64,000 nt of DNA from IMGVR_UViG_3300013005_000001:124001-188000; one strand, 5' to 3'; positions 34,113 to 45,716 are shown, counted from the stretch's first letter. Made by a program: numbers and translations. Notes: a model not told the origin generated them from the sequence alone.

Positions 34113-35305
34113 TGGCTATTCAAGTACAATATCGTAGAGGTACAGCAGCACAATGGACTAGCGCAAATCCAACATTAGCAGTTGGTGAACCGGGGTATGA
34201 AACAGATACTGGTAAATTTAAGGTAGGTACTGGGGCAGCCGCTTGGACTTCTCTATCTTATAGCTCAGGTCCTGTGGGGCCTACAGGATCTGCTGCAAGC
34301 TTAACATTAGGAACTGTAACCACAGGAGATGCTGGATCTTCAGTTGCAATCACAAACTCTGGCACATCGAGTGCTGCTATTTTTAACTTCACTATTCCTA
34401 GGGGCGATACTGGAGCCACAGGGCCTACAGGGCCTACAGGGCCTACTGGAACAGCTGCTACAATCACTGTTGGTACCGTCTCTGCTGGTACGGCAGCAGT
34501 GACTAATTCAGGCACAAGTAGTGCAGCAGTTCTTGATTTTACATTACAAACAGGTGCTACTGGACCCACCGGACCCACCGGACCAACTGGACCTACTGGA
34601 CCTACTGGCTCTATTGGTTCAGCAACATTAGATGATCTTTCAGACACAATAATAACAAGTCCCGCAACTGCTCAAATTTTAAGGTATAACGGAACCAACT
34701 GGGTCAACTATGCTTCGACCCTTACCCTTGGTGGAAACTTTACTACCTCAGGTGCATATACAACATCTTTGACTGCAACAGCAAATACAGCCATAACACT
34801 TCCGACTACAGGTACTCTCTCGACTCTTGACGGAATGGAAATTCTAACTAACAAGACTCTTACCAGTCCAGCAGTTGACACACCATTTTTAACGCTTTCA
34901 ACAAGTACATCAACAACTGATGCAAGAATTTTTTGGGATTCTACAAATAAAAAAATAAGAGTAGGCAATGGAACAATATCATTAGACTTTGCTTCTTCTA
35001 ACGTCATAACAAATGCTCAAACTGCAAGTTACACATTGGTTTTGGCTGACAAAGATAAACTTGTCGAAATAAGCAACGCATCAGCTAACACTCTAACTGT
35101 TCCAGCAAACTCTTCAGTAGCTTTCCCTATTGGAACACAAATGACAATACTTCAAACAGGTACTGGACAGACTACAATTGCAGCTGCAGGTGGAGTAACC
35201 GTAAATGCAACACCAGGCTTAAAGCTTAGAGCTCAATGGTCTTCAGTTACTTTGATAAAAAGAGCTACAGATACTTGGGTTGCACTAGGCGACTTGCAAG
35301 CTTAA
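34112..35305 (+). CDS. Fibre protein with Mtd_N-like N-terminus and collagen-like GPT repeats
   Basis: [34 protein letters not shown]; (GPT)n; C-terminal W.ALGDL. Confidence 0.85.
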
Positions 35306-35844
35306 TCTTTCTTAATGCACCAAAAATTAGTAGAGCACCAACGGTATCCTCTTTTAATCTCTTTTACTTGATGCGGAAATTCATCTTTAGCTGGAAAACA
35401 AATAAACATTCCAGGCTCTGGTTTGACAAGTAAATCTTGTTTAGGAAAATAGATCTCTCCACCTTCATAGTTATTATTATAATAAAGCACTGAGCTAAGA
35501 TCTCTAGTTGGATGTCCAGCTCCAGTCTTTAGACCAACACTTTTATTCTGCGCAGATCCGTGATCTAGATGAACTGGCATTGAATCTCCAGTTTTCATTT
35601 CTACCACACTAGTTAATCCCTCATCATGAACTTTGCAACCAAAGCAACTTTCTATAATTTCCTTTATTTTATCATGATACTTACTCAAGAGTGTAGGTAA
35701 ATCTGGACGGCCATTGCCAGCATAAACTCCAAATGGAGAATATCCAGATTCATCAATTGTAACTGGCGTATCATTTAAGTATATTAAAATTTTTTCTAGA
35801 TCTTGTCTGTCTAAAATATCTTTAAAAATATGAATCTTATCCAT
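35302..35844 (-). CDS. 2OG-Fe(II) oxygenase (prolyl-4-hydroxylase-like)
   Basis: HLD...YEGGEIYF...H.V...G.R. Confidence 0.9.
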
Positions 35845-35845
35845 T

Positions 35846-36466
35846 TTATCTCAATTCTGTAATAGTATAAAAAGATGGAGTTGTGTATCTTTCTCCAGAG
35901 ATAACTGGTTTAACTCCGTGCAAATAGTTAACATCACCAGGATGAGCTACAGCTAAACCAGGTTTTGGGGTTACGATCAAATCATGATCTGGATAATAAA
36001 GCTCCCCACCTTTAAAGTTATCATTGTAATAAAATAATGAATTTATATCATAAGTTGGAAAAGGATTTGGTTTACCGTCATTAGTCTGTTTGTCCGCATG
36101 CGGTTTTTGTTCCATGCCCGGACGCCATTTGATTATTACTGGAGGCCTATTAGATAGTCCAACTTTAAAAGATTGCTCTAAAAATTGTTTCATTTTTTTA
36201 ATATATTTATCGATAATATTATAAACTTCAACATTAAGTTTCTGAAGAATATCCCAACTACACTGTCTATCAGCCCAGTAAGAAGCATCATATATGCAAG
36301 TGCCATCAGCAGCGTACTGATTTTCTCCAGCATCCATCCATTCATTAATGGTTGGGAGAAACTTTTGAATTACTTTAAGGTCATCTATATCTATGAAATT
36401 ATTAATTATTTTTATATTGTCAATAGACTTACCAAAATGACCTGGCTTAACGAGTGACTGCTCCAT
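35846..36466 (-). CDS. 2OG-Fe(II) oxygenase (P4H-like)
   Basis: HAD...FKGGELYY...HGVKPVISGERY. Confidence 0.9.
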   Translation of the reverse strand: MEQSLVKPGHFGKSIDNIKIINNFIDIDDLKVIQKFLPTINEWMDAGENQYAADGTCIYDASYWADRQCSWDILQKLNVEVYNIIDKYIKKMKQFLEQSFKVGLSNRPPVIIKWRPGMEQKPHADKQTNDGKPNPFPTYDINSLFYYNDNFKGGELYYPDHDLIVTPKPGLAVAHPGDVNYLHGVKPVISGERYTTPSFYTITELR

Positions 36467-44023: not shown

Positions 44024-44901
44024 TTTTTAATAAAGTAGAACCAAAACACTTAGGTGGTGGAGTAGTGGTCTTTGAAGCCTGTCTTGATTTAGATTGGGAG
44101 AACTTACTCAAAAGATCAAATCAGTTAATAGAAGAAGAATGGAACGATATGTATTCTCCAGGAATAGATCCTGAGACTGGTGAAGAAATATATGTAAACA
44201 AAAGTGGTTATTTCTTCAATAAAGGCAGCATTGACTTAATGCCAAAAAGAGCTAGTGCGATTCATTACAAGGACAATGAAGATTTGCGTGACCTTTTTTC
44301 TTTTATAGAGTCGGCAAAAGACAAATGCTTGTTACAATATTTTGAGCTTTTTCCATTGGCTTACAAATGTGTATGGTGGAAAGTCAAAGGTCATATATTG
44401 CAATATCCAAAAAATGTTTACCTTGGCTCCCATTCAGATATCAGTGGTGATTACATCTATGGAGTTTTAGAACCTCAAGATCAATTGGCCTTAAGAAACG
44501 TCGTTACAAGTTTAGTGTATTTTAATGATTCAGTTGATAACGAGAAAGATCTAGATGGTCAAAATTACATTGGTGGACATCATTATTTTAATTATTTAGA
44601 CATAGATTATTCTCCCAAAAAAGGAGATATAATATTCTTCCCATCTAACTACATGGCTGCCCACGAGGTAAAACCGGTAAAAGAAGGCCTTAGATACAGT
44701 TATCTTGGATGGTATAGTCAAGGGACTCCTAACCCAGCTGTTCACGAATATGTAGCAGATCCCTTAAAAGATCCTGAACTATCAAAGAAAGCAACAAACG
44801 TTTATATGACGACGCTTAGAGAAGATTTGAAAAAACATCTAATAGAATCTGGATACAAAGAAGATTCTCCTCAGTTCTATATTACAAAATCAAACTATTA
44901 A
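44020..44901 (+). CDS. 2OG-Fe(II) oxygenase
   Basis: HSD..YIGG..FPSNYMAAHEV..GLRY. Confidence 0.9.
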   Translation: MIFNKVEPKHLGGGVVVFEACLDLDWENLLKRSNQLIEEEWNDMYSPGIDPETGEEIYVNKSGYFFNKGSIDLMPKRASAIHYKDNEDLRDLFSFIESAKDKCLLQYFELFPLAYKCVWWKVKGHILQYPKNVYLGSHSDISGDYIYGVLEPQDQLALRNVVTSLVYFNDSVDNEKDLDGQNYIGGHHYFNYLDIDYSPKKGDIIFFPSNYMAAHEVKPVKEGLRYSYLGWYSQGTPNPAVHEYVADPLKDPELSKKATNVYMTTLREDLKKHLIESGYKEDSPQFYITKSNY

Positions 44902-44909
44902 GGAACCTT

Positions 44910-45716
44910 ATGAAATCTAAACATATTGGAATGGGCGTAGTCATATGCGAAAACGTAATTGATATAGACCAAGATTTTCTTTTTGAATATATTAATTGGA
45001 TTCGCAAAAATCAAGAAGACACTTTTGTTTATTTAGAGGAAGATGGCGTAGAGTACGCTATTAATAAAACTGGTTTTAAATTTAAGCTAGAAGACGTTAA
45101 GCAGGCACCACAAAGATTTTTGGATACAAAAGGAAAACAATTAAACTCTCCTGTTCCTCAGAAATACATCGATTTTATAGACTCACTAGAGAACGCAGTC
45201 TACGATGCTCTTGTGGAATACTGCTGTTACTTCCCGGACGCAGGGACAACATCTTGGTGGAGACCAACTGGTCATATAGCTGGATATGAAAATGGTCAAA
45301 GAATAGGCCAGCATTGCGACGATCAAGTACCTTACGAATGGGGTAAGCCAACAAGCAATCAAGTCTCGATGCATAATAGTTCAAGCATAAACTTATATTT
45401 AAATGATTGCGTAGACTCACAAGATGATTTAAATAATTTTAATTATACTGGTGGAGAAATCCATTTTCCAAATATTCCATATGTTTGGAAACCAAAAGCT
45501 GGATCAGTGGCAATATATCCTTCTAGCTACATTGGTAGACATGAAGTCTATCCTGTGGATCTGGGCCAGCGTTATGCGTTCTTGAGCATAGCTTGTTATG
45601 GCACATCTTTTGACAGAGAAGAAACAGTTGGGCAAGAGAATGATCAAAAACACTGGATGCCGGACCTAATAAAAGATGTTAATAATAGGGTTGGTAAAAA
45701 GAATTTTTTACTTTAA
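44910..45716 (+). CDS. 2OG-Fe(II) oxygenase
   Basis: HCDD..YTGGEI..YPSSYIGRHEV..GQRY. Confidence 0.9.
   Translation: MKSKHIGMGVVICENVIDIDQDFLFEYINWIRKNQEDTFVYLEEDGVEYAINKTGFKFKLEDVKQAPQRFLDTKGKQLNSPVPQKYIDFIDSLENAVYDALVEYCCYFPDAGTTSWWRPTGHIAGYENGQRIGQHCDDQVPYEWGKPTSNQVSMHNSSSINLYLNDCVDSQDDLNNFNYTGGEIHFPNIPYVWKPKAGSVAIYPSSYIGRHEVYPVDLGQRYAFLSIACYGTSFDREETVGQENDQKHWMPDLIKDVNNRVGKKNFLL

What the first reader, a model, noticed from the sequence alone, without database searches (positions are those of the whole stretch)
35302..45716. Ten-kb oxidative tailoring island within the structural genes
Eight 2OG-Fe(II) oxygenases (four tandem paralogues at 41994-45716 sharing WW...GHI and FPSNY-like motifs), two GPx homologues and a DUF6065-like gene lie between the collagen/Pro-rich fibres and the neck genes. 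Inference: a post-translational modification pathway for virion fibres, with peroxidases protecting the Fe enzymes or cross-linking Tyr. Phage 2OG oxygenases are known; this number and linkage are notable.
Basis: partly seen in the sequence, partly recalled or inferred. Interest (0 to 1): 0.65.

Follow-up and report, generated by a model that had tools for sequence, protein, structure and literature searches.

The report
Phage fibre-linked prolyl-hydroxylase-like gene island
A 210-kb lake-water phage carries a conserved block of eight prolyl-hydroxylase-type iron enzymes, plus helper genes, directly after genes for proline-rich tail or head fibres; the same pairing recurs in distantly related phages, so the enzymes most likely modify the phage's own fibres, which has never been shown for a bacteriophage.

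Summary
Window 35302-45716 holds eight 2OG-Fe(II) oxygenase genes, all with an invariant HxD...H triad and a basic 2OG-binding residue. It also holds two glutathione-peroxidase-fold genes and a DUF6065 gene, and lies between fibre genes and the tail sheath of a complete 210-kb lake phage related to Bacillus phage 0305phi8-36.

A model of one tandem paralogue (pLDDT 93) matches only prolyl-hydroxylase-type structures. The island is syntenic in more than 80 uncultured phage contigs and evolves more slowly than the sheath.

The strongest new evidence is linkage. An unusual (F/Y)FPP repeat fibre gene sits just upstream. Across IMG/VR, 48 of 58 such repeat loci have these oxygenases within 4.5 kb, including deeply diverged lineages. 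For (GPT)n collagen loci the figure is 10 of 67.

DUF6065 has a dUTPase-like fold. Elsewhere it occurs fused to PF13640 or JmjC oxygenases, so it is probably an accessory part of the system.

The "peroxidase" idea is weak. One GPx homologue lacks the peroxidatic Cys, both lack the canonical tetrad, and both occur only in this clade.

Fibre hydroxylation is the best explanation (about 0.5) but is inferred, not shown. I rate it a new variant of a known kind.

The parts
31051..33057 (+). Fibre protein, 668 aa
   Evidence: PHROG tail-fibre and virion-structural families. Weak BppL_N match.
33099..33531 (+). (Y/F)FPP-repeat protein, about 15 four-residue units; candidate substrate. The gene is split: ATG 33099 gives 42 aa, and the repeats lie in the +1 frame, which opens at 33157.
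   Evidence: Homologues in other loci carry FN3 domains or a C-terminal tail that by eye resembles the Peptidase_S74 chaperone domain; this was not tested.
33543..34112 (+). Collagen-like (GPT)n protein, 189 aa
   Evidence: Pfam Collagen E 7e-5, below the cut-off. Repeats are visible in the sequence.
34097..35305 (+). Mtd_N domain plus (GPT)n fibre or receptor-binding protein, 402 aa
   Evidence: PF18454 62.8 bits. Present in 34 of 51 related loci.
35302..35844 (-). 2OG-Fe(II) oxygenase a, 180 aa (H92, D94, H158, R168)
   Evidence: PF13640 42 bits. Catalytic residues invariant.
35846..36466 (-). 2OG-Fe(II) oxygenase b, 206 aa (H123, D125, H183, R193); core gene
   Evidence: PF13640 27.4 bits. 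Median 76% identity over 47 of 51 loci. Residues checked.
36555..37241 (+). 2OG-Fe(II) oxygenase c, 228 aa (H131, D133, H184, K194). Lys-type, the most collagen/algal-P4H-like; core gene in all module types.
   Evidence: PF13640 39.6 bits. Matches B. anthracis P4H (3itq) by sequence, E 1.6e-4.
37243..37923 (+). GPx-fold protein 1. The ORF opens at 37165, but GTG 37243 is the likely start.
   Evidence: PF00255 47.5 bits. Cys75 is invariant, Gln is replaced by Asp105, Trp by Gly191, and there is an extra invariant Cys107. Start codon examined.
37901..38623 (+). DUF6065 protein with a dUTPase-like fold; core gene in all module types
   Evidence: PF19541 151 bits. AF2 model pLDDT 87. Foldseek and VIA best matches are dUTPases, Z 10.4. 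Fusion clusters with PF13640 or Cupin_8/JmjC.
38682..39163 (+). Two small acidic proteins (85 and 73 aa) that share a 16-residue motif; variable presence
   Evidence: Present in 14 and 27 of 51 loci. No family match.
39175..40344 (+). Unknown 389-aa protein; variable, not core
   Evidence: No Pfam or PHROG match. Atlas model pLDDT 0.31 with no usable hit. Present in 21 of 51 loci.
40368..41039 (+). Divergent 2OG-Fe(II) oxygenase d, 223 aa (H104, D106, H188, R198)
   Evidence: PF13640 26.3 bits, just under the cut-off. Catalytic residues invariant in 37 orthologues.
41066..41383 (+). Small protein, 105 aa; its stop overlaps the start of GPx-fold gene 2
   Evidence: Present in 44 of 51 loci. No family match.
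41380..41997 (+). GPx-fold protein 2, 205 aa. It lacks the peroxidatic Cys and has an invariant Cys42 in a 13-residue insert.
   Evidence: PF00255 104.8 bits. Alignment to yeast and poplar GPx. Column counts. Present in 51 of 51 loci at a median 72% identity, though these loci were fetched with this gene, so its presence is by construction.
41994..45716 (+). Four tandem paralogous 2OG-Fe(II) oxygenases e-h (367, 308, 293 and 268 aa) with overlapping or abutting stops and starts
   Evidence: PF13640 33.6-42.8 bits. 31-37% pairwise identity. AF2 model of 44020-44901 has pLDDT 93 and matches P4H/PHD-type folds. Each is present in 51 of 51 loci.
45752..47518 (+). Three downstream genes of unknown role between the island and the sheath; presumed structural
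   Evidence: Conserved synteny. Weak PHROG virion-protein hit for 47138-47518. No homology found to 0305phi8-36 gp132-136.
47665..49140 (+). Sheath-like protein that marks the start of the tail module
   Evidence: Weak Phage_sheath_1C match, E 0.0015. A second sheath (49961) and tube genes are homologous to 0305phi8-36 gp139-141.

Best explanation
The island is a conserved module in the structural-gene region that matures the phage's own proline-rich fibres.

Proposed mechanism. Eight catalytically intact oxygenases of the prolyl-hydroxylase type use Fe(II), O2 and 2-oxoglutarate. They hydroxylate residues, most plausibly the Pro-Pro pairs, in the (F/Y)FPP-repeat protein encoded immediately upstream, and perhaps also in the (GPT)n collagen-like fibres. 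One enzyme has the Lys of collagen/algal-type P4Hs at the 2OG-binding position. The other seven have the Arg of PHD-type enzymes.

Accessory parts. DUF6065, a dUTPase-fold and probably trimeric protein, is an accessory or substrate-handling partner of the oxygenases. The two GPx-fold proteins are clade-specific thioredoxin-fold accessories. They may act as a redox helper or chaperone, loosely like PDI in animal collagen P4H, rather than as classical peroxidases.

What is shown: gene content, intact active sites, fold class, conservation and linkage.

What is inferred: the substrate, the residue modified, late expression and the roles of the accessory proteins.
For: 1. All eight keep HxD...H plus Arg or Lys at His+10, invariant over 30-51 orthologues each.
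2. The AF2 model of 44020-44901 (pLDDT 93) has as its best listed PDB matches almost only protein prolyl-hydroxylase-type folds: PBCV-1 vCPH 5c5t, Chlamydomonas P4H 2jig/3gze, B. anthracis P4H 3itq, PPHD-EF-Tu 4iw3, PHD2 and OGFOD1, plus uncharacterised oxygenases such as PiuC/YbiX and 6n1f. 36555-37241 matches B. anthracis P4H by sequence.
3. The island keeps the same position, between fibres and neck or sheath, in more than 80 IMG/VR contigs. Its core genes are more conserved (median 54-76% identity) than the sheath (43%).
4. Of 58 (F/Y)FPP-repeat loci in IMG/VR with at least 4 kb downstream, 48 have such an oxygenase within 4.5 kb and 42 have DUF6065 within 6 kb. Two of five exception contigs checked carry 6 and 11 PF13640 genes elsewhere. 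Conversely, five of five island contigs checked carry FFPP arrays.
5. The same order (fibre, FFPP, PF13640 x2, DUF6065, more PF13640) occurs in loci whose DUF6065 is only 24-33% identical to this one. For four contigs of this kind searched (only G001, holding L092, is among the loci measured), no window-type capsid or sheath was detected.
6. In unrelated contigs a (GPT)n collagen-like gene is directly followed, 0.5-0.8 kb away on the same strand, by a single PF13640 gene. The rate for GPT loci is 10 of 67, against 48 of 58 for FFPP loci; Fisher p = 6e-15, though the loci are not independent.
7. DUF6065 occurs fused to PF13640 in viral clusters and to Cupin_8/JmjC in bacterial clusters.
8. Precedent from the literature: PBCV-1 P4H acts on proline-rich repeats of viral proteins (cited in PMC9301287).
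Against: - There is no direct evidence of hydroxylation.
- The enzyme-FFPP complex prediction gave no verdict.
- In (GPT)n the Pro sits in the X position, which is not the classical collagen-P4H site (general knowledge).
- Linkage counts include many related contigs, so they overstate independence.
- Some FFPP proteins in large multidomain architectures have no oxygenase in the held flank.
- PiuC/YbiX-type proteins of unknown substrate score as well as the P4Hs in the fold search.
- Eight enzymes for one four-residue repeat is more than a simple model needs.
- Promoter and terminator scans gave nothing above chance, so late co-expression is assumed from position only.
Confidence: 0.5

Rival explanations
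1. Host take-over or auxiliary metabolism. The oxygenases hydroxylate host proteins such as EF-Tu or ribosomal proteins, or they consume 2-oxoglutarate to re-tune host metabolism, as proposed for the multi-copy 2OG-Fe(II) oxygenases of marine cyanomyoviruses. On this view their place beside fibre genes reflects a plastic genome region.
For: - Cyanomyoviruses carry one to five such genes of unknown role, for which DNA repair or 2OG modulation have been proposed (PMC3037559).
- PPHD with EF-Tu and OGFOD1 are among the structural matches.
- PHROGs file these families as morons or AMGs.
Against: - The FFPP-oxygenase-DUF6065 order is kept across lineages with 24-40% identity. A mere hot-spot would not preserve that.
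- The genes sit inside the structural block, with overlapping stops and starts.
- No psbA or other cyanophage hallmark was found.
- Similarity to cyanophage oxygenases is low: 29-32% identity over 41-46% of the length.
Confidence: 0.2
2. Small-molecule or glycan tailoring. The oxygenases, the thioredoxin-fold proteins and DUF6065 form a pathway that makes or decorates a metabolite, a RiPP-like peptide or a surface polysaccharide.
For: - Jumbo cyanophages have clusters with 2OGFeDO enzymes that have been interpreted as secondary-metabolite or capsule-decoration systems (PMC7824862).
- The island holds small acidic ORFs and unknown genes.
- PiuC/YbiX-type relatives have no known protein substrate.
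Against: - The island has no core biosynthetic enzymes: no transferases, ligases, cyclases or transporters.
- The two GT2 genes lie about 130 kb away.
- The small ORFs are not conserved across the clade.
- Characterised PF13640 members are protein hydroxylases (general knowledge).
Confidence: 0.1
3. Nucleic-acid or nucleotide modification or repair. The oxygenases act on DNA, RNA or nucleotides in the manner of AlkB or TET/JBP, and the dUTPase-fold DUF6065 handles the nucleotide.
For: - DUF6065 has the dUTPase/dCTP-deaminase fold, Z 10.4.
- PHROG families hit by these proteins are labelled 'DNA endonuclease'.
- There is a weak Tet_JBP match in one type-B homologue, E 2.5e-4, below the cut-off.
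Against: - None of the eight proteins has an AlkB or TET/JBP Pfam match.
- The best listed fold matches are almost all prolyl-hydroxylase type.
- No dUTPase sequence similarity was detected for DUF6065.
- DUF6065 is fused to JmjC/Cupin_8 and PF13640 domains, which are families of protein hydroxylases.
- The PHROG labels are probably annotation carry-over.
Confidence: 0.05

Closest known systems
PBCV-1 (chlorovirus) prolyl 4-hydroxylase vCPH/A085R and its proline-rich repeat substrates
   Same: It is a virus-encoded PF13640-type enzyme and a top structural match (5c5t). Its genome also encodes proline-rich repeat proteins taken as the substrates. That substrate logic is recalled from Eriksson et al. 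1999, which is cited in PMC9301287.
   Different: PBCV-1 is a eukaryotic virus with one enzyme and (PAPK)n-type repeats. Here a bacteriophage has 8-9 diversified enzymes in one block, a different aromatic-proline repeat, and DUF6065 and GPx-fold partners.
Multi-copy 2OG-Fe(II) oxygenase genes of marine T4-like cyanomyoviruses
   Same: Several PF13640-type genes per phage genome, with function unknown (PMC3037559). Cyanophage homologues appear among the viral structural matches.
   Different: Cyanomyoviruses have one to five genes listed per genome, with no described link to repeat fibres. Similarity is only 29-32% identity over 41-46% of the length. This phage is of the 0305phi8-36 type, not T4-like, and no psbA was found.
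Bacillus anthracis P4H and Chlamydomonas/plant P4Hs
   Same: 36555-37241 matches B. anthracis P4H by sequence (E 1.6e-4) and has Lys at the 2OG-binding position. Algal P4Hs act on Pro-rich polyproline-II substrates (general knowledge; 3gze with a (Ser-Pro)5 peptide is listed).
   Different: Identity is low. No NCBIfam or other equivalog assignment was reached. The other seven enzymes have Arg, as PHD-type enzymes do.
Animal collagen P4H alpha2-beta2 with PDI as the beta subunit (analogy only, from general knowledge)
   Same: A P4H-type oxygenase works together with a thioredoxin-fold protein. The island pairs oxygenases with two GPx-fold, thioredoxin-like proteins whose peroxidase residues are degenerate.
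   Different: No homology to PDI was tested or claimed, and no interaction has been shown. The GPx-fold genes are missing from the diverged module types.
Bacillus phage 0305phi8-36 (jumbo myovirus with curly fibres)
   Same: Terminase, portal, protease/scaffold, major capsid protein, sheath and duplicated tube genes are homologous (28-41% identity) and in the same order. In both phages fibre genes lie between the capsid and sheath genes.
   Different: 0305phi8-36 has no oxygenase, GPx or DUF6065 genes annotated in that interval. Its fibre genes show no detectable homology to those here.

Membership tests
2OG-Fe(II) oxygenase, PF13640 (P4Hc/PHD-type) | Pfam profile match at or above the gathering score | tested here: met
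   Seven genes score 27.4-42.8 bits against a cut-off of 27. 40368-41039 scores 26.3 bits, just below it.
2OG-Fe(II) oxygenase, PF13640 (P4Hc/PHD-type) | HxD...H iron triad and a basic 2OG-binding residue | tested here: met
   Invariant in all eight orthologue families, with 30-51 sequences each. The residue at His+10 is Lys in 36555-37241 and Arg in the other seven.
2OG-Fe(II) oxygenase, PF13640 (P4Hc/PHD-type) | Double-stranded beta-helix fold of the prolyl-hydroxylase subfamily | tested here: met
   The model of 44020-44901 has pLDDT 93. Foldseek matches to vCPH, Cr-P4H, BaP4H, PPHD and PHD2 have E 1e-7 to 1e-9 and target-normalised TM 0.55-0.68. Only one of the eight proteins was modelled.
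Prolyl 4-hydroxylase (enzyme activity) | Hydroxylation of peptidyl proline, coupled to 2OG decarboxylation | not testable with these tools
   This needs enzyme assays or mass spectrometry. The complex prediction gave no verdict.
Glutathione peroxidase (PF00255) | Pfam profile match at or above the gathering score | tested here: met
   47.5 and 104.8 bits against a cut-off of 27. NCBIfam GPx equivalogs were not reached: 66.8 and 109.6 bits against 270.
Glutathione peroxidase (PF00255) | Peroxidatic Cys/Sec in the NVAS-x-C/U-G motif | tested here: not met
   41380-41997 has Phe at this position; across the clade it is A19, F12, Y7, C2, S2. An invariant Cys lies six residues later. 37243-37923 does keep the Cys (Cys75, 23 of 23).
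Glutathione peroxidase (PF00255) | Catalytic Gln, Trp and Asn of the tetrad | tested here: not met
   GPx2: Gln79 is kept, Trp is replaced by His159, and Asn160 is variable. GPx1: Gln is replaced by Asp105, Trp by Gly191, and Asn192 is kept.
DUF6065 (PF19541) | Pfam profile match at or above the gathering score | tested here: met
   151.4 bits against a cut-off of 26.6.
Trimeric dUTPase / dCTP deaminase superfamily | Jelly-roll fold of the superfamily | tested here: met
   VIA-align Z 10.4-6.0. The top 22 rows are all dUTPase or dCTP-deaminase type or viral dUTPase-derived proteins. Foldseek E 2e-5.
Trimeric dUTPase / dCTP deaminase superfamily | Conserved dUTPase sequence motifs and catalytic residues | tested here: inconclusive
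   A profile search of the PDB found no dUTPase. No residue-level structural alignment was available, so enzyme membership is not claimed.
AlkB / TET-JBP nucleic-acid oxygenases | Pfam match to PF13532 or PF12851 | tested here: not met
   Neither family appears at E <= 0.01 for any of the eight proteins.
Collagen-like triple-helix protein | Uninterrupted Gly-X-Y repeats | tested here: met
   (GPT)n runs in 33543-34112 and 34097-35305. The Pfam Collagen match is below its cut-off because the runs are short.

The most novel reading that the evidence does not exclude
A widespread and ancient phage system in which arrays of 7-11 diversified prolyl-hydroxylase-like enzymes, together with a dUTPase-fold DUF6065 adaptor, heavily and site-specifically hydroxylate a previously undescribed aromatic-proline (F/Y)FPP rod in virion fibres. 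This would be a bacterial-virus counterpart of plant extensin or collagen maturation. It would be the first enzymatic hydroxylation of bacteriophage structural proteins and would give a function to DUF6065.
Probability: 0.3. Interest if true: 0.8.

Novelty: new variant of a known kind. Interest (0 to 1): 0.6.

Why it matters
Phage genomes and viromes are full of 2OG-Fe(II) oxygenase and 'P4H' genes whose role is openly called cryptic (PMC9301287; PMC3037559).

This island offers a concrete, testable enzyme-substrate pairing. A defined repeat protein lies directly upstream of its candidate hydroxylases, and the pairing is conserved across divergent lake phages.

If confirmed, it would have four consequences:
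- It would establish post-translational hydroxylation of bacteriophage fibres.
- It would explain why these genes multiply.
- It would assign a role to DUF6065.
- It would introduce a new proline-aromatic structural repeat of interest for protein materials.

It would also move a large class of viral 'auxiliary metabolic genes' into virion maturation.

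Tried and rejected
- **Search for close isolates.** Megablast of the island and tblastn of the sheath against 50,697 phage records found nothing. The capsid protein gave the 0305phi8-36 link instead.
- **Complex prediction.** Complex prediction of oxygenase 36555-37241 with the FFPP tail gave no verdict (score 0.00). It is evidence neither for nor against binding.
- **Transcription signals.** Promoter and terminator scans were at shuffle level (70 sites against 60 expected; 10 against 9), so no operon boundaries could be called.
- **Bacterial DUF6065 context.** Two bacterial DUF6065 genes (L214, L215) sit among housekeeping genes with no oxygenase nearby, so they give no context clue. 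Five other 'MAG' hits are 65-76% identical matches on contigs labelled as four different bacterial groups, taken here to be phage contigs binned into bacterial genomes.
- **389-aa protein (39175-40344).** No family, no Atlas neighbour, and a poor Atlas model.
- **DUF6065 as a ninth oxygenase.** Rejected: the fold is dUTPase-like, not DSBH.
- **DUF6065-oxygenase fusions among my own loci.** None found. The fusions are only in Atlas clusters.
- **Glycosyltransferases for Hyp glycosylation.** Two GT2 genes exist, but about 130 kb from the island.
- **Cyanophage identity.** No psbA and no PF13759 match.
- **RNA evidence.** Four lake metatranscriptome runs hold short contigs (150-340 nt) with no differing bases on 40368-44444. 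DNA carry-over cannot be excluded, so this is not counted as proof of expression.
- **Three 186-aa ORFs at 2-4.7 kb.** They looked like paralogues by length but share no similarity.
- **Not used.** The large representative protein search was not run, because no claim here rests on absence of relatives. No alternative genetic code was needed.

Full report
**Setting.** The window is bases 124001-188000 of a complete 210,302-bp IMG/VR virus record with terminal repeats. GC content is 37.5%, there are six tRNAs, and no psbA was found.

Terminase, portal, protease/scaffold, major capsid, sheath and duplicated tube genes are 28-41% identical to those of Bacillus phage 0305phi8-36 and lie in the same order. 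The phage is therefore an uncultured lake-water relative of that jumbo myovirus lineage. Eighteen lake-water metagenome runs, each from a different study, hold more than 75% of the island's sampled words; six of them may be the source of this DNA. No cultured phage is close.

**The observation.**
- Seven genes match PF13640 above the gathering score. An eighth (40368-41039) scores 26.3 bits against 27.
- In alignments of 30-51 distinct orthologues, all eight families keep an invariant HxD...H triad and a basic residue ten positions after the second His. That residue is Lys in 36555-37241, as in collagen/algal-type P4Hs, and Arg in the other seven, as in PHD-type enzymes.
Their stops and starts overlap or abut.
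- Two GSHPx-fold genes and one DUF6065 gene are present.
- Seven of the genome's eight PF13640 matches fall in this 10.4 kb; binomial p = 6e-9. The remaining match lies at genome 58020-58313.

**What kind of oxygenases.** An AlphaFold2 model of 44020-44901, built on 46 sequences, has mean pLDDT 93.
- Its best PDB matches are PiuC/YbiX, PBCV-1 vCPH, Chlamydomonas P4H, Pseudomonas PPHD, B. anthracis P4H, PHD2 and OGFOD1. All are of the prolyl-hydroxylase type. No AlkB, TET, TauD or JmjC structure is among the rows listed.
- Among viral models, the nearest are dioxygenases of uncultured Caudovirales, then cyanophage and giant-virus P4H-like proteins.
- 36555-37241 matches B. anthracis P4H by sequence alone.
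- NCBIfam assigns none of the eight to an equivalog.
- The PHROG labels 'DNA endonuclease' and 'ferrochelatase' on the matching families look like annotation carry-over.

**Conservation.** A search anchored on GPx-fold gene 2 found 118 relatives in IMG/VR. The 80 kept loci are 70-91% identical to it.
- In every locus long enough to judge, the island sits between fibre genes and the neck or sheath genes.
- The core consists of 35846, 36555, DUF6065, GPx-2 and the four tandem genes.
- In 51 loci that also hold the sheath, median identity to the window is 54-76% for these oxygenases, 76% for DUF6065 and 72% for GPx-2. The sheath is 43% and the two genes before it are 48-53%.
- The small acidic ORFs, the 389-aa ORF and oxygenase 35302 are variable.

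**The link to fibres.** Directly upstream lies an unusual protein made of about 15 (Y/F)FPP units. Homologues have 4-27 units (median 10). They occur in three architectures: as short proteins; behind FN3 domains, with a C-terminal tail that by eye resembles the Peptidase_S74 chaperone domain in some short forms (not tested); and as linkers in proteins of 900 aa or more. The repeat is therefore a stalk element of phage surface proteins.

- Of the 58 loci with at least 4 kb downstream, 48 have one of these oxygenases within 4.5 kb and 42 have DUF6065 within 6 kb.
- Five of the exception contigs were checked. Two have 6 and 11 PF13640 genes elsewhere, and three are fragments estimated at 5-31% complete.
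- Conversely, five of five island-bearing contigs where I had not seen the repeat do carry it. For three of them I compared coordinates, and the array lies just upstream of the island.

Many loci have a different arrangement: fibre, FFPP, two 36555-like genes, DUF6065, then three to seven 35846/35302-like genes, with no GPx. In these, DUF6065 is only 24-33% identical to the window's and the oxygenases are 36-43% identical. Four contigs with FFPP-linked modules were searched (estimated 57-83% complete; only G001, which holds L092, is among the loci measured). None gave a match to this phage's capsid or sheath protein, and three of them hold 7-8 PF13640 genes each, the fourth one. The fibre-oxygenase-DUF6065 module is therefore older than this clade.

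As a control, I scanned for (GPT)5 collagen repeats. Ten of 67 loci of at least 8 kb have an oxygenase hit. In several unrelated contigs this is a single PF13640 gene 0.5-0.8 kb downstream of the collagen-like gene on the same strand. The contrast of 48 of 58 against 10 of 67 gives Fisher p = 6e-15, but relatedness among contigs inflates this figure.

**DUF6065.** The AF2 model (pLDDT 87) has the dUTPase/dCTP-deaminase jelly-roll fold. Foldseek gives E 2e-5. VIA-align gives Z 10.4, and its top 22 rows are all from that superfamily. No dUTPase sequence similarity was found.

ESM Atlas neighbours include a viral cluster of PF13640-DUF6065 fusion proteins and a bacterial cluster of Cupin_8/JmjC-DUF6065 fusions. 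Together with the conserved adjacency, this makes DUF6065 a likely accessory domain of protein-hydroxylase-type oxygenases. What it does is unknown.

**The GPx homologues.** Both match the family profile, but neither keeps the catalytic tetrad.
- In 41380-41997 the peroxidatic position is Phe here and A, F, Y, C or S across the clade. Trp is replaced by His and Asn is variable. An invariant Cys42 sits in a conserved 13-residue insert.
- In 37243-37923 the Cys is kept, but Gln is replaced by Asp and Trp by Gly, and there is a second invariant Cys.
- The two proteins are 26% identical to each other and are absent from the diverged module types.

I therefore treat them as clade-specific thioredoxin-fold accessories of unknown chemistry. 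A protective-peroxidase role is possible for the first but unsupported for the second. Tyrosine cross-linking is not a known activity of this fold.

**Mechanism proposed.** After synthesis, the proline-rich fibre proteins are hydroxylated by a set of sub-specialised P4H-like enzymes. DUF6065 assists, and the modified fibres are then assembled. The -Pro-Pro- context resembles the substrates of algal, plant and chlorovirus P4Hs more than (GPT)n does, because in (GPT)n the Pro occupies the X position (general knowledge).

Gene content, intact active sites, fold class, conservation and linkage are shown. The substrate, the modified residue, the timing and the accessory roles are inferred. The rivals are host-protein or 2OG-pool manipulation, small-molecule or glycan tailoring, and nucleic-acid chemistry. 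They are listed with their evidence in the Rival explanations section.

**Limits.**
- Only one oxygenase and DUF6065 were modelled.
- Linkage counts are not phylogenetically independent.
- 'No capsid or sheath match' in fragmentary contigs is weak evidence.
- RNA contigs from four lake metatranscriptomes cover parts of 40368-44444 with no differing bases, but they could be DNA carry-over.
- The host is unknown.

**Verdict.** I rate this a new variant of a known kind: a virus-encoded P4H with proline-rich virion proteins. It is notable for the number of enzymes, the new repeat, the DUF6065 link and the breadth of conservation.

Noticed in passing
window 33099-33531: The (Y/F)FPP gene is split. 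ATG 33099 opens a 42-codon frame whose product is conserved with the N-terminus of intact homologues. The repeats continue in the +1 frame, which opens at 33157, and the two frames overlap over about 33157-33225. Eight distinct sequences share the split at the same spot with different local sequence, and three (L014, L027, L103) are single ORFs. This may be a programmed +1 frameshift rather than an assembly error.
   Followed up: partly
L091-L208 (IMG/VR); e.g. L125:749-1726, L097:4421-7171, L064:1875-2513: (F/Y/H/W)FPP four-residue repeats of 4-27 units form a recurrent stalk or linker element in phage surface proteins. They occur behind FN3 domains, inside 900-aa multidomain proteins, and in short proteins, some of which (e.g. 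L064) end in a tail that by eye resembles the Peptidase_S74 chaperone domain (not tested). I found no description of this repeat in the papers searched.
   Followed up: partly
ESM Atlas clusters: DUF6065 occurs fused to PF13640 in a viral cluster (about 382 aa, 84 members) and to Cupin_8/JmjC_2 in a bacterial cluster (about 546 aa, 73 members). This ties the unknown family to protein-hydroxylase-type oxygenases.
   Followed up: partly
L220:10239-11521, L280:3902-5088, L317:10769-11943, L304:2719-4021, L302:3708-5120: In unrelated viral contigs a (GPT)n collagen-like gene is followed 0.5-0.8 kb downstream, on the same strand, by a single PF13640 gene of about 190 aa (56-63 bits). This is a simpler version of the same pairing.
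   Followed up: partly
L209-L213 (genome contigs): Five DUF6065 matches, 65-76% identical to the window's, lie on contigs labelled as MAGs of Acidibacter, Cyclobacteriaceae, Gammaproteobacteria and Verrucomicrobiales. I take them to be relatives of this phage binned into bacterial genomes, so those labels give no host evidence. The contigs themselves were not examined.
   Followed up: no
genome G000:C1:58020-58313 (-), outside the window: A further PF13640 gene (203-aa frame, 44 bits) lies about 100 kb from the island.
   Followed up: no
window 47665-52758: Two sheath-like genes (47665, 49961) with a gene between them, and two tube paralogues (51260, 52042). This mirrors the gp137-gp141 arrangement of Bacillus phage 0305phi8-36.
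   Followed up: partly
window 5189-6175 (-) and 7091-8260 (+): A full-length RecA (395 bits) and a ClpX/ClpB-type AAA+ ATPase are encoded upstream of the packaging and structural block. The first 2 kb of the window are GC-richer (47%) than the rest (about 37%).
   Followed up: no
window 20672-22498: A 608-aa protein with a C-terminal Peptidase_S74 intramolecular-chaperone domain, typical of a fibre or spike, lies between the terminase and portal genes, apart from the other fibre genes.
   Followed up: no
PHROG families phrog_2297, phrog_274, phrog_3531: Families labelled 'DNA endonuclease', 'DNA endonuclease V' and 'ferrochelatase' match the 2OG-oxygenase domains of these proteins. The labels look like propagated mis-annotations.
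   Followed up: no
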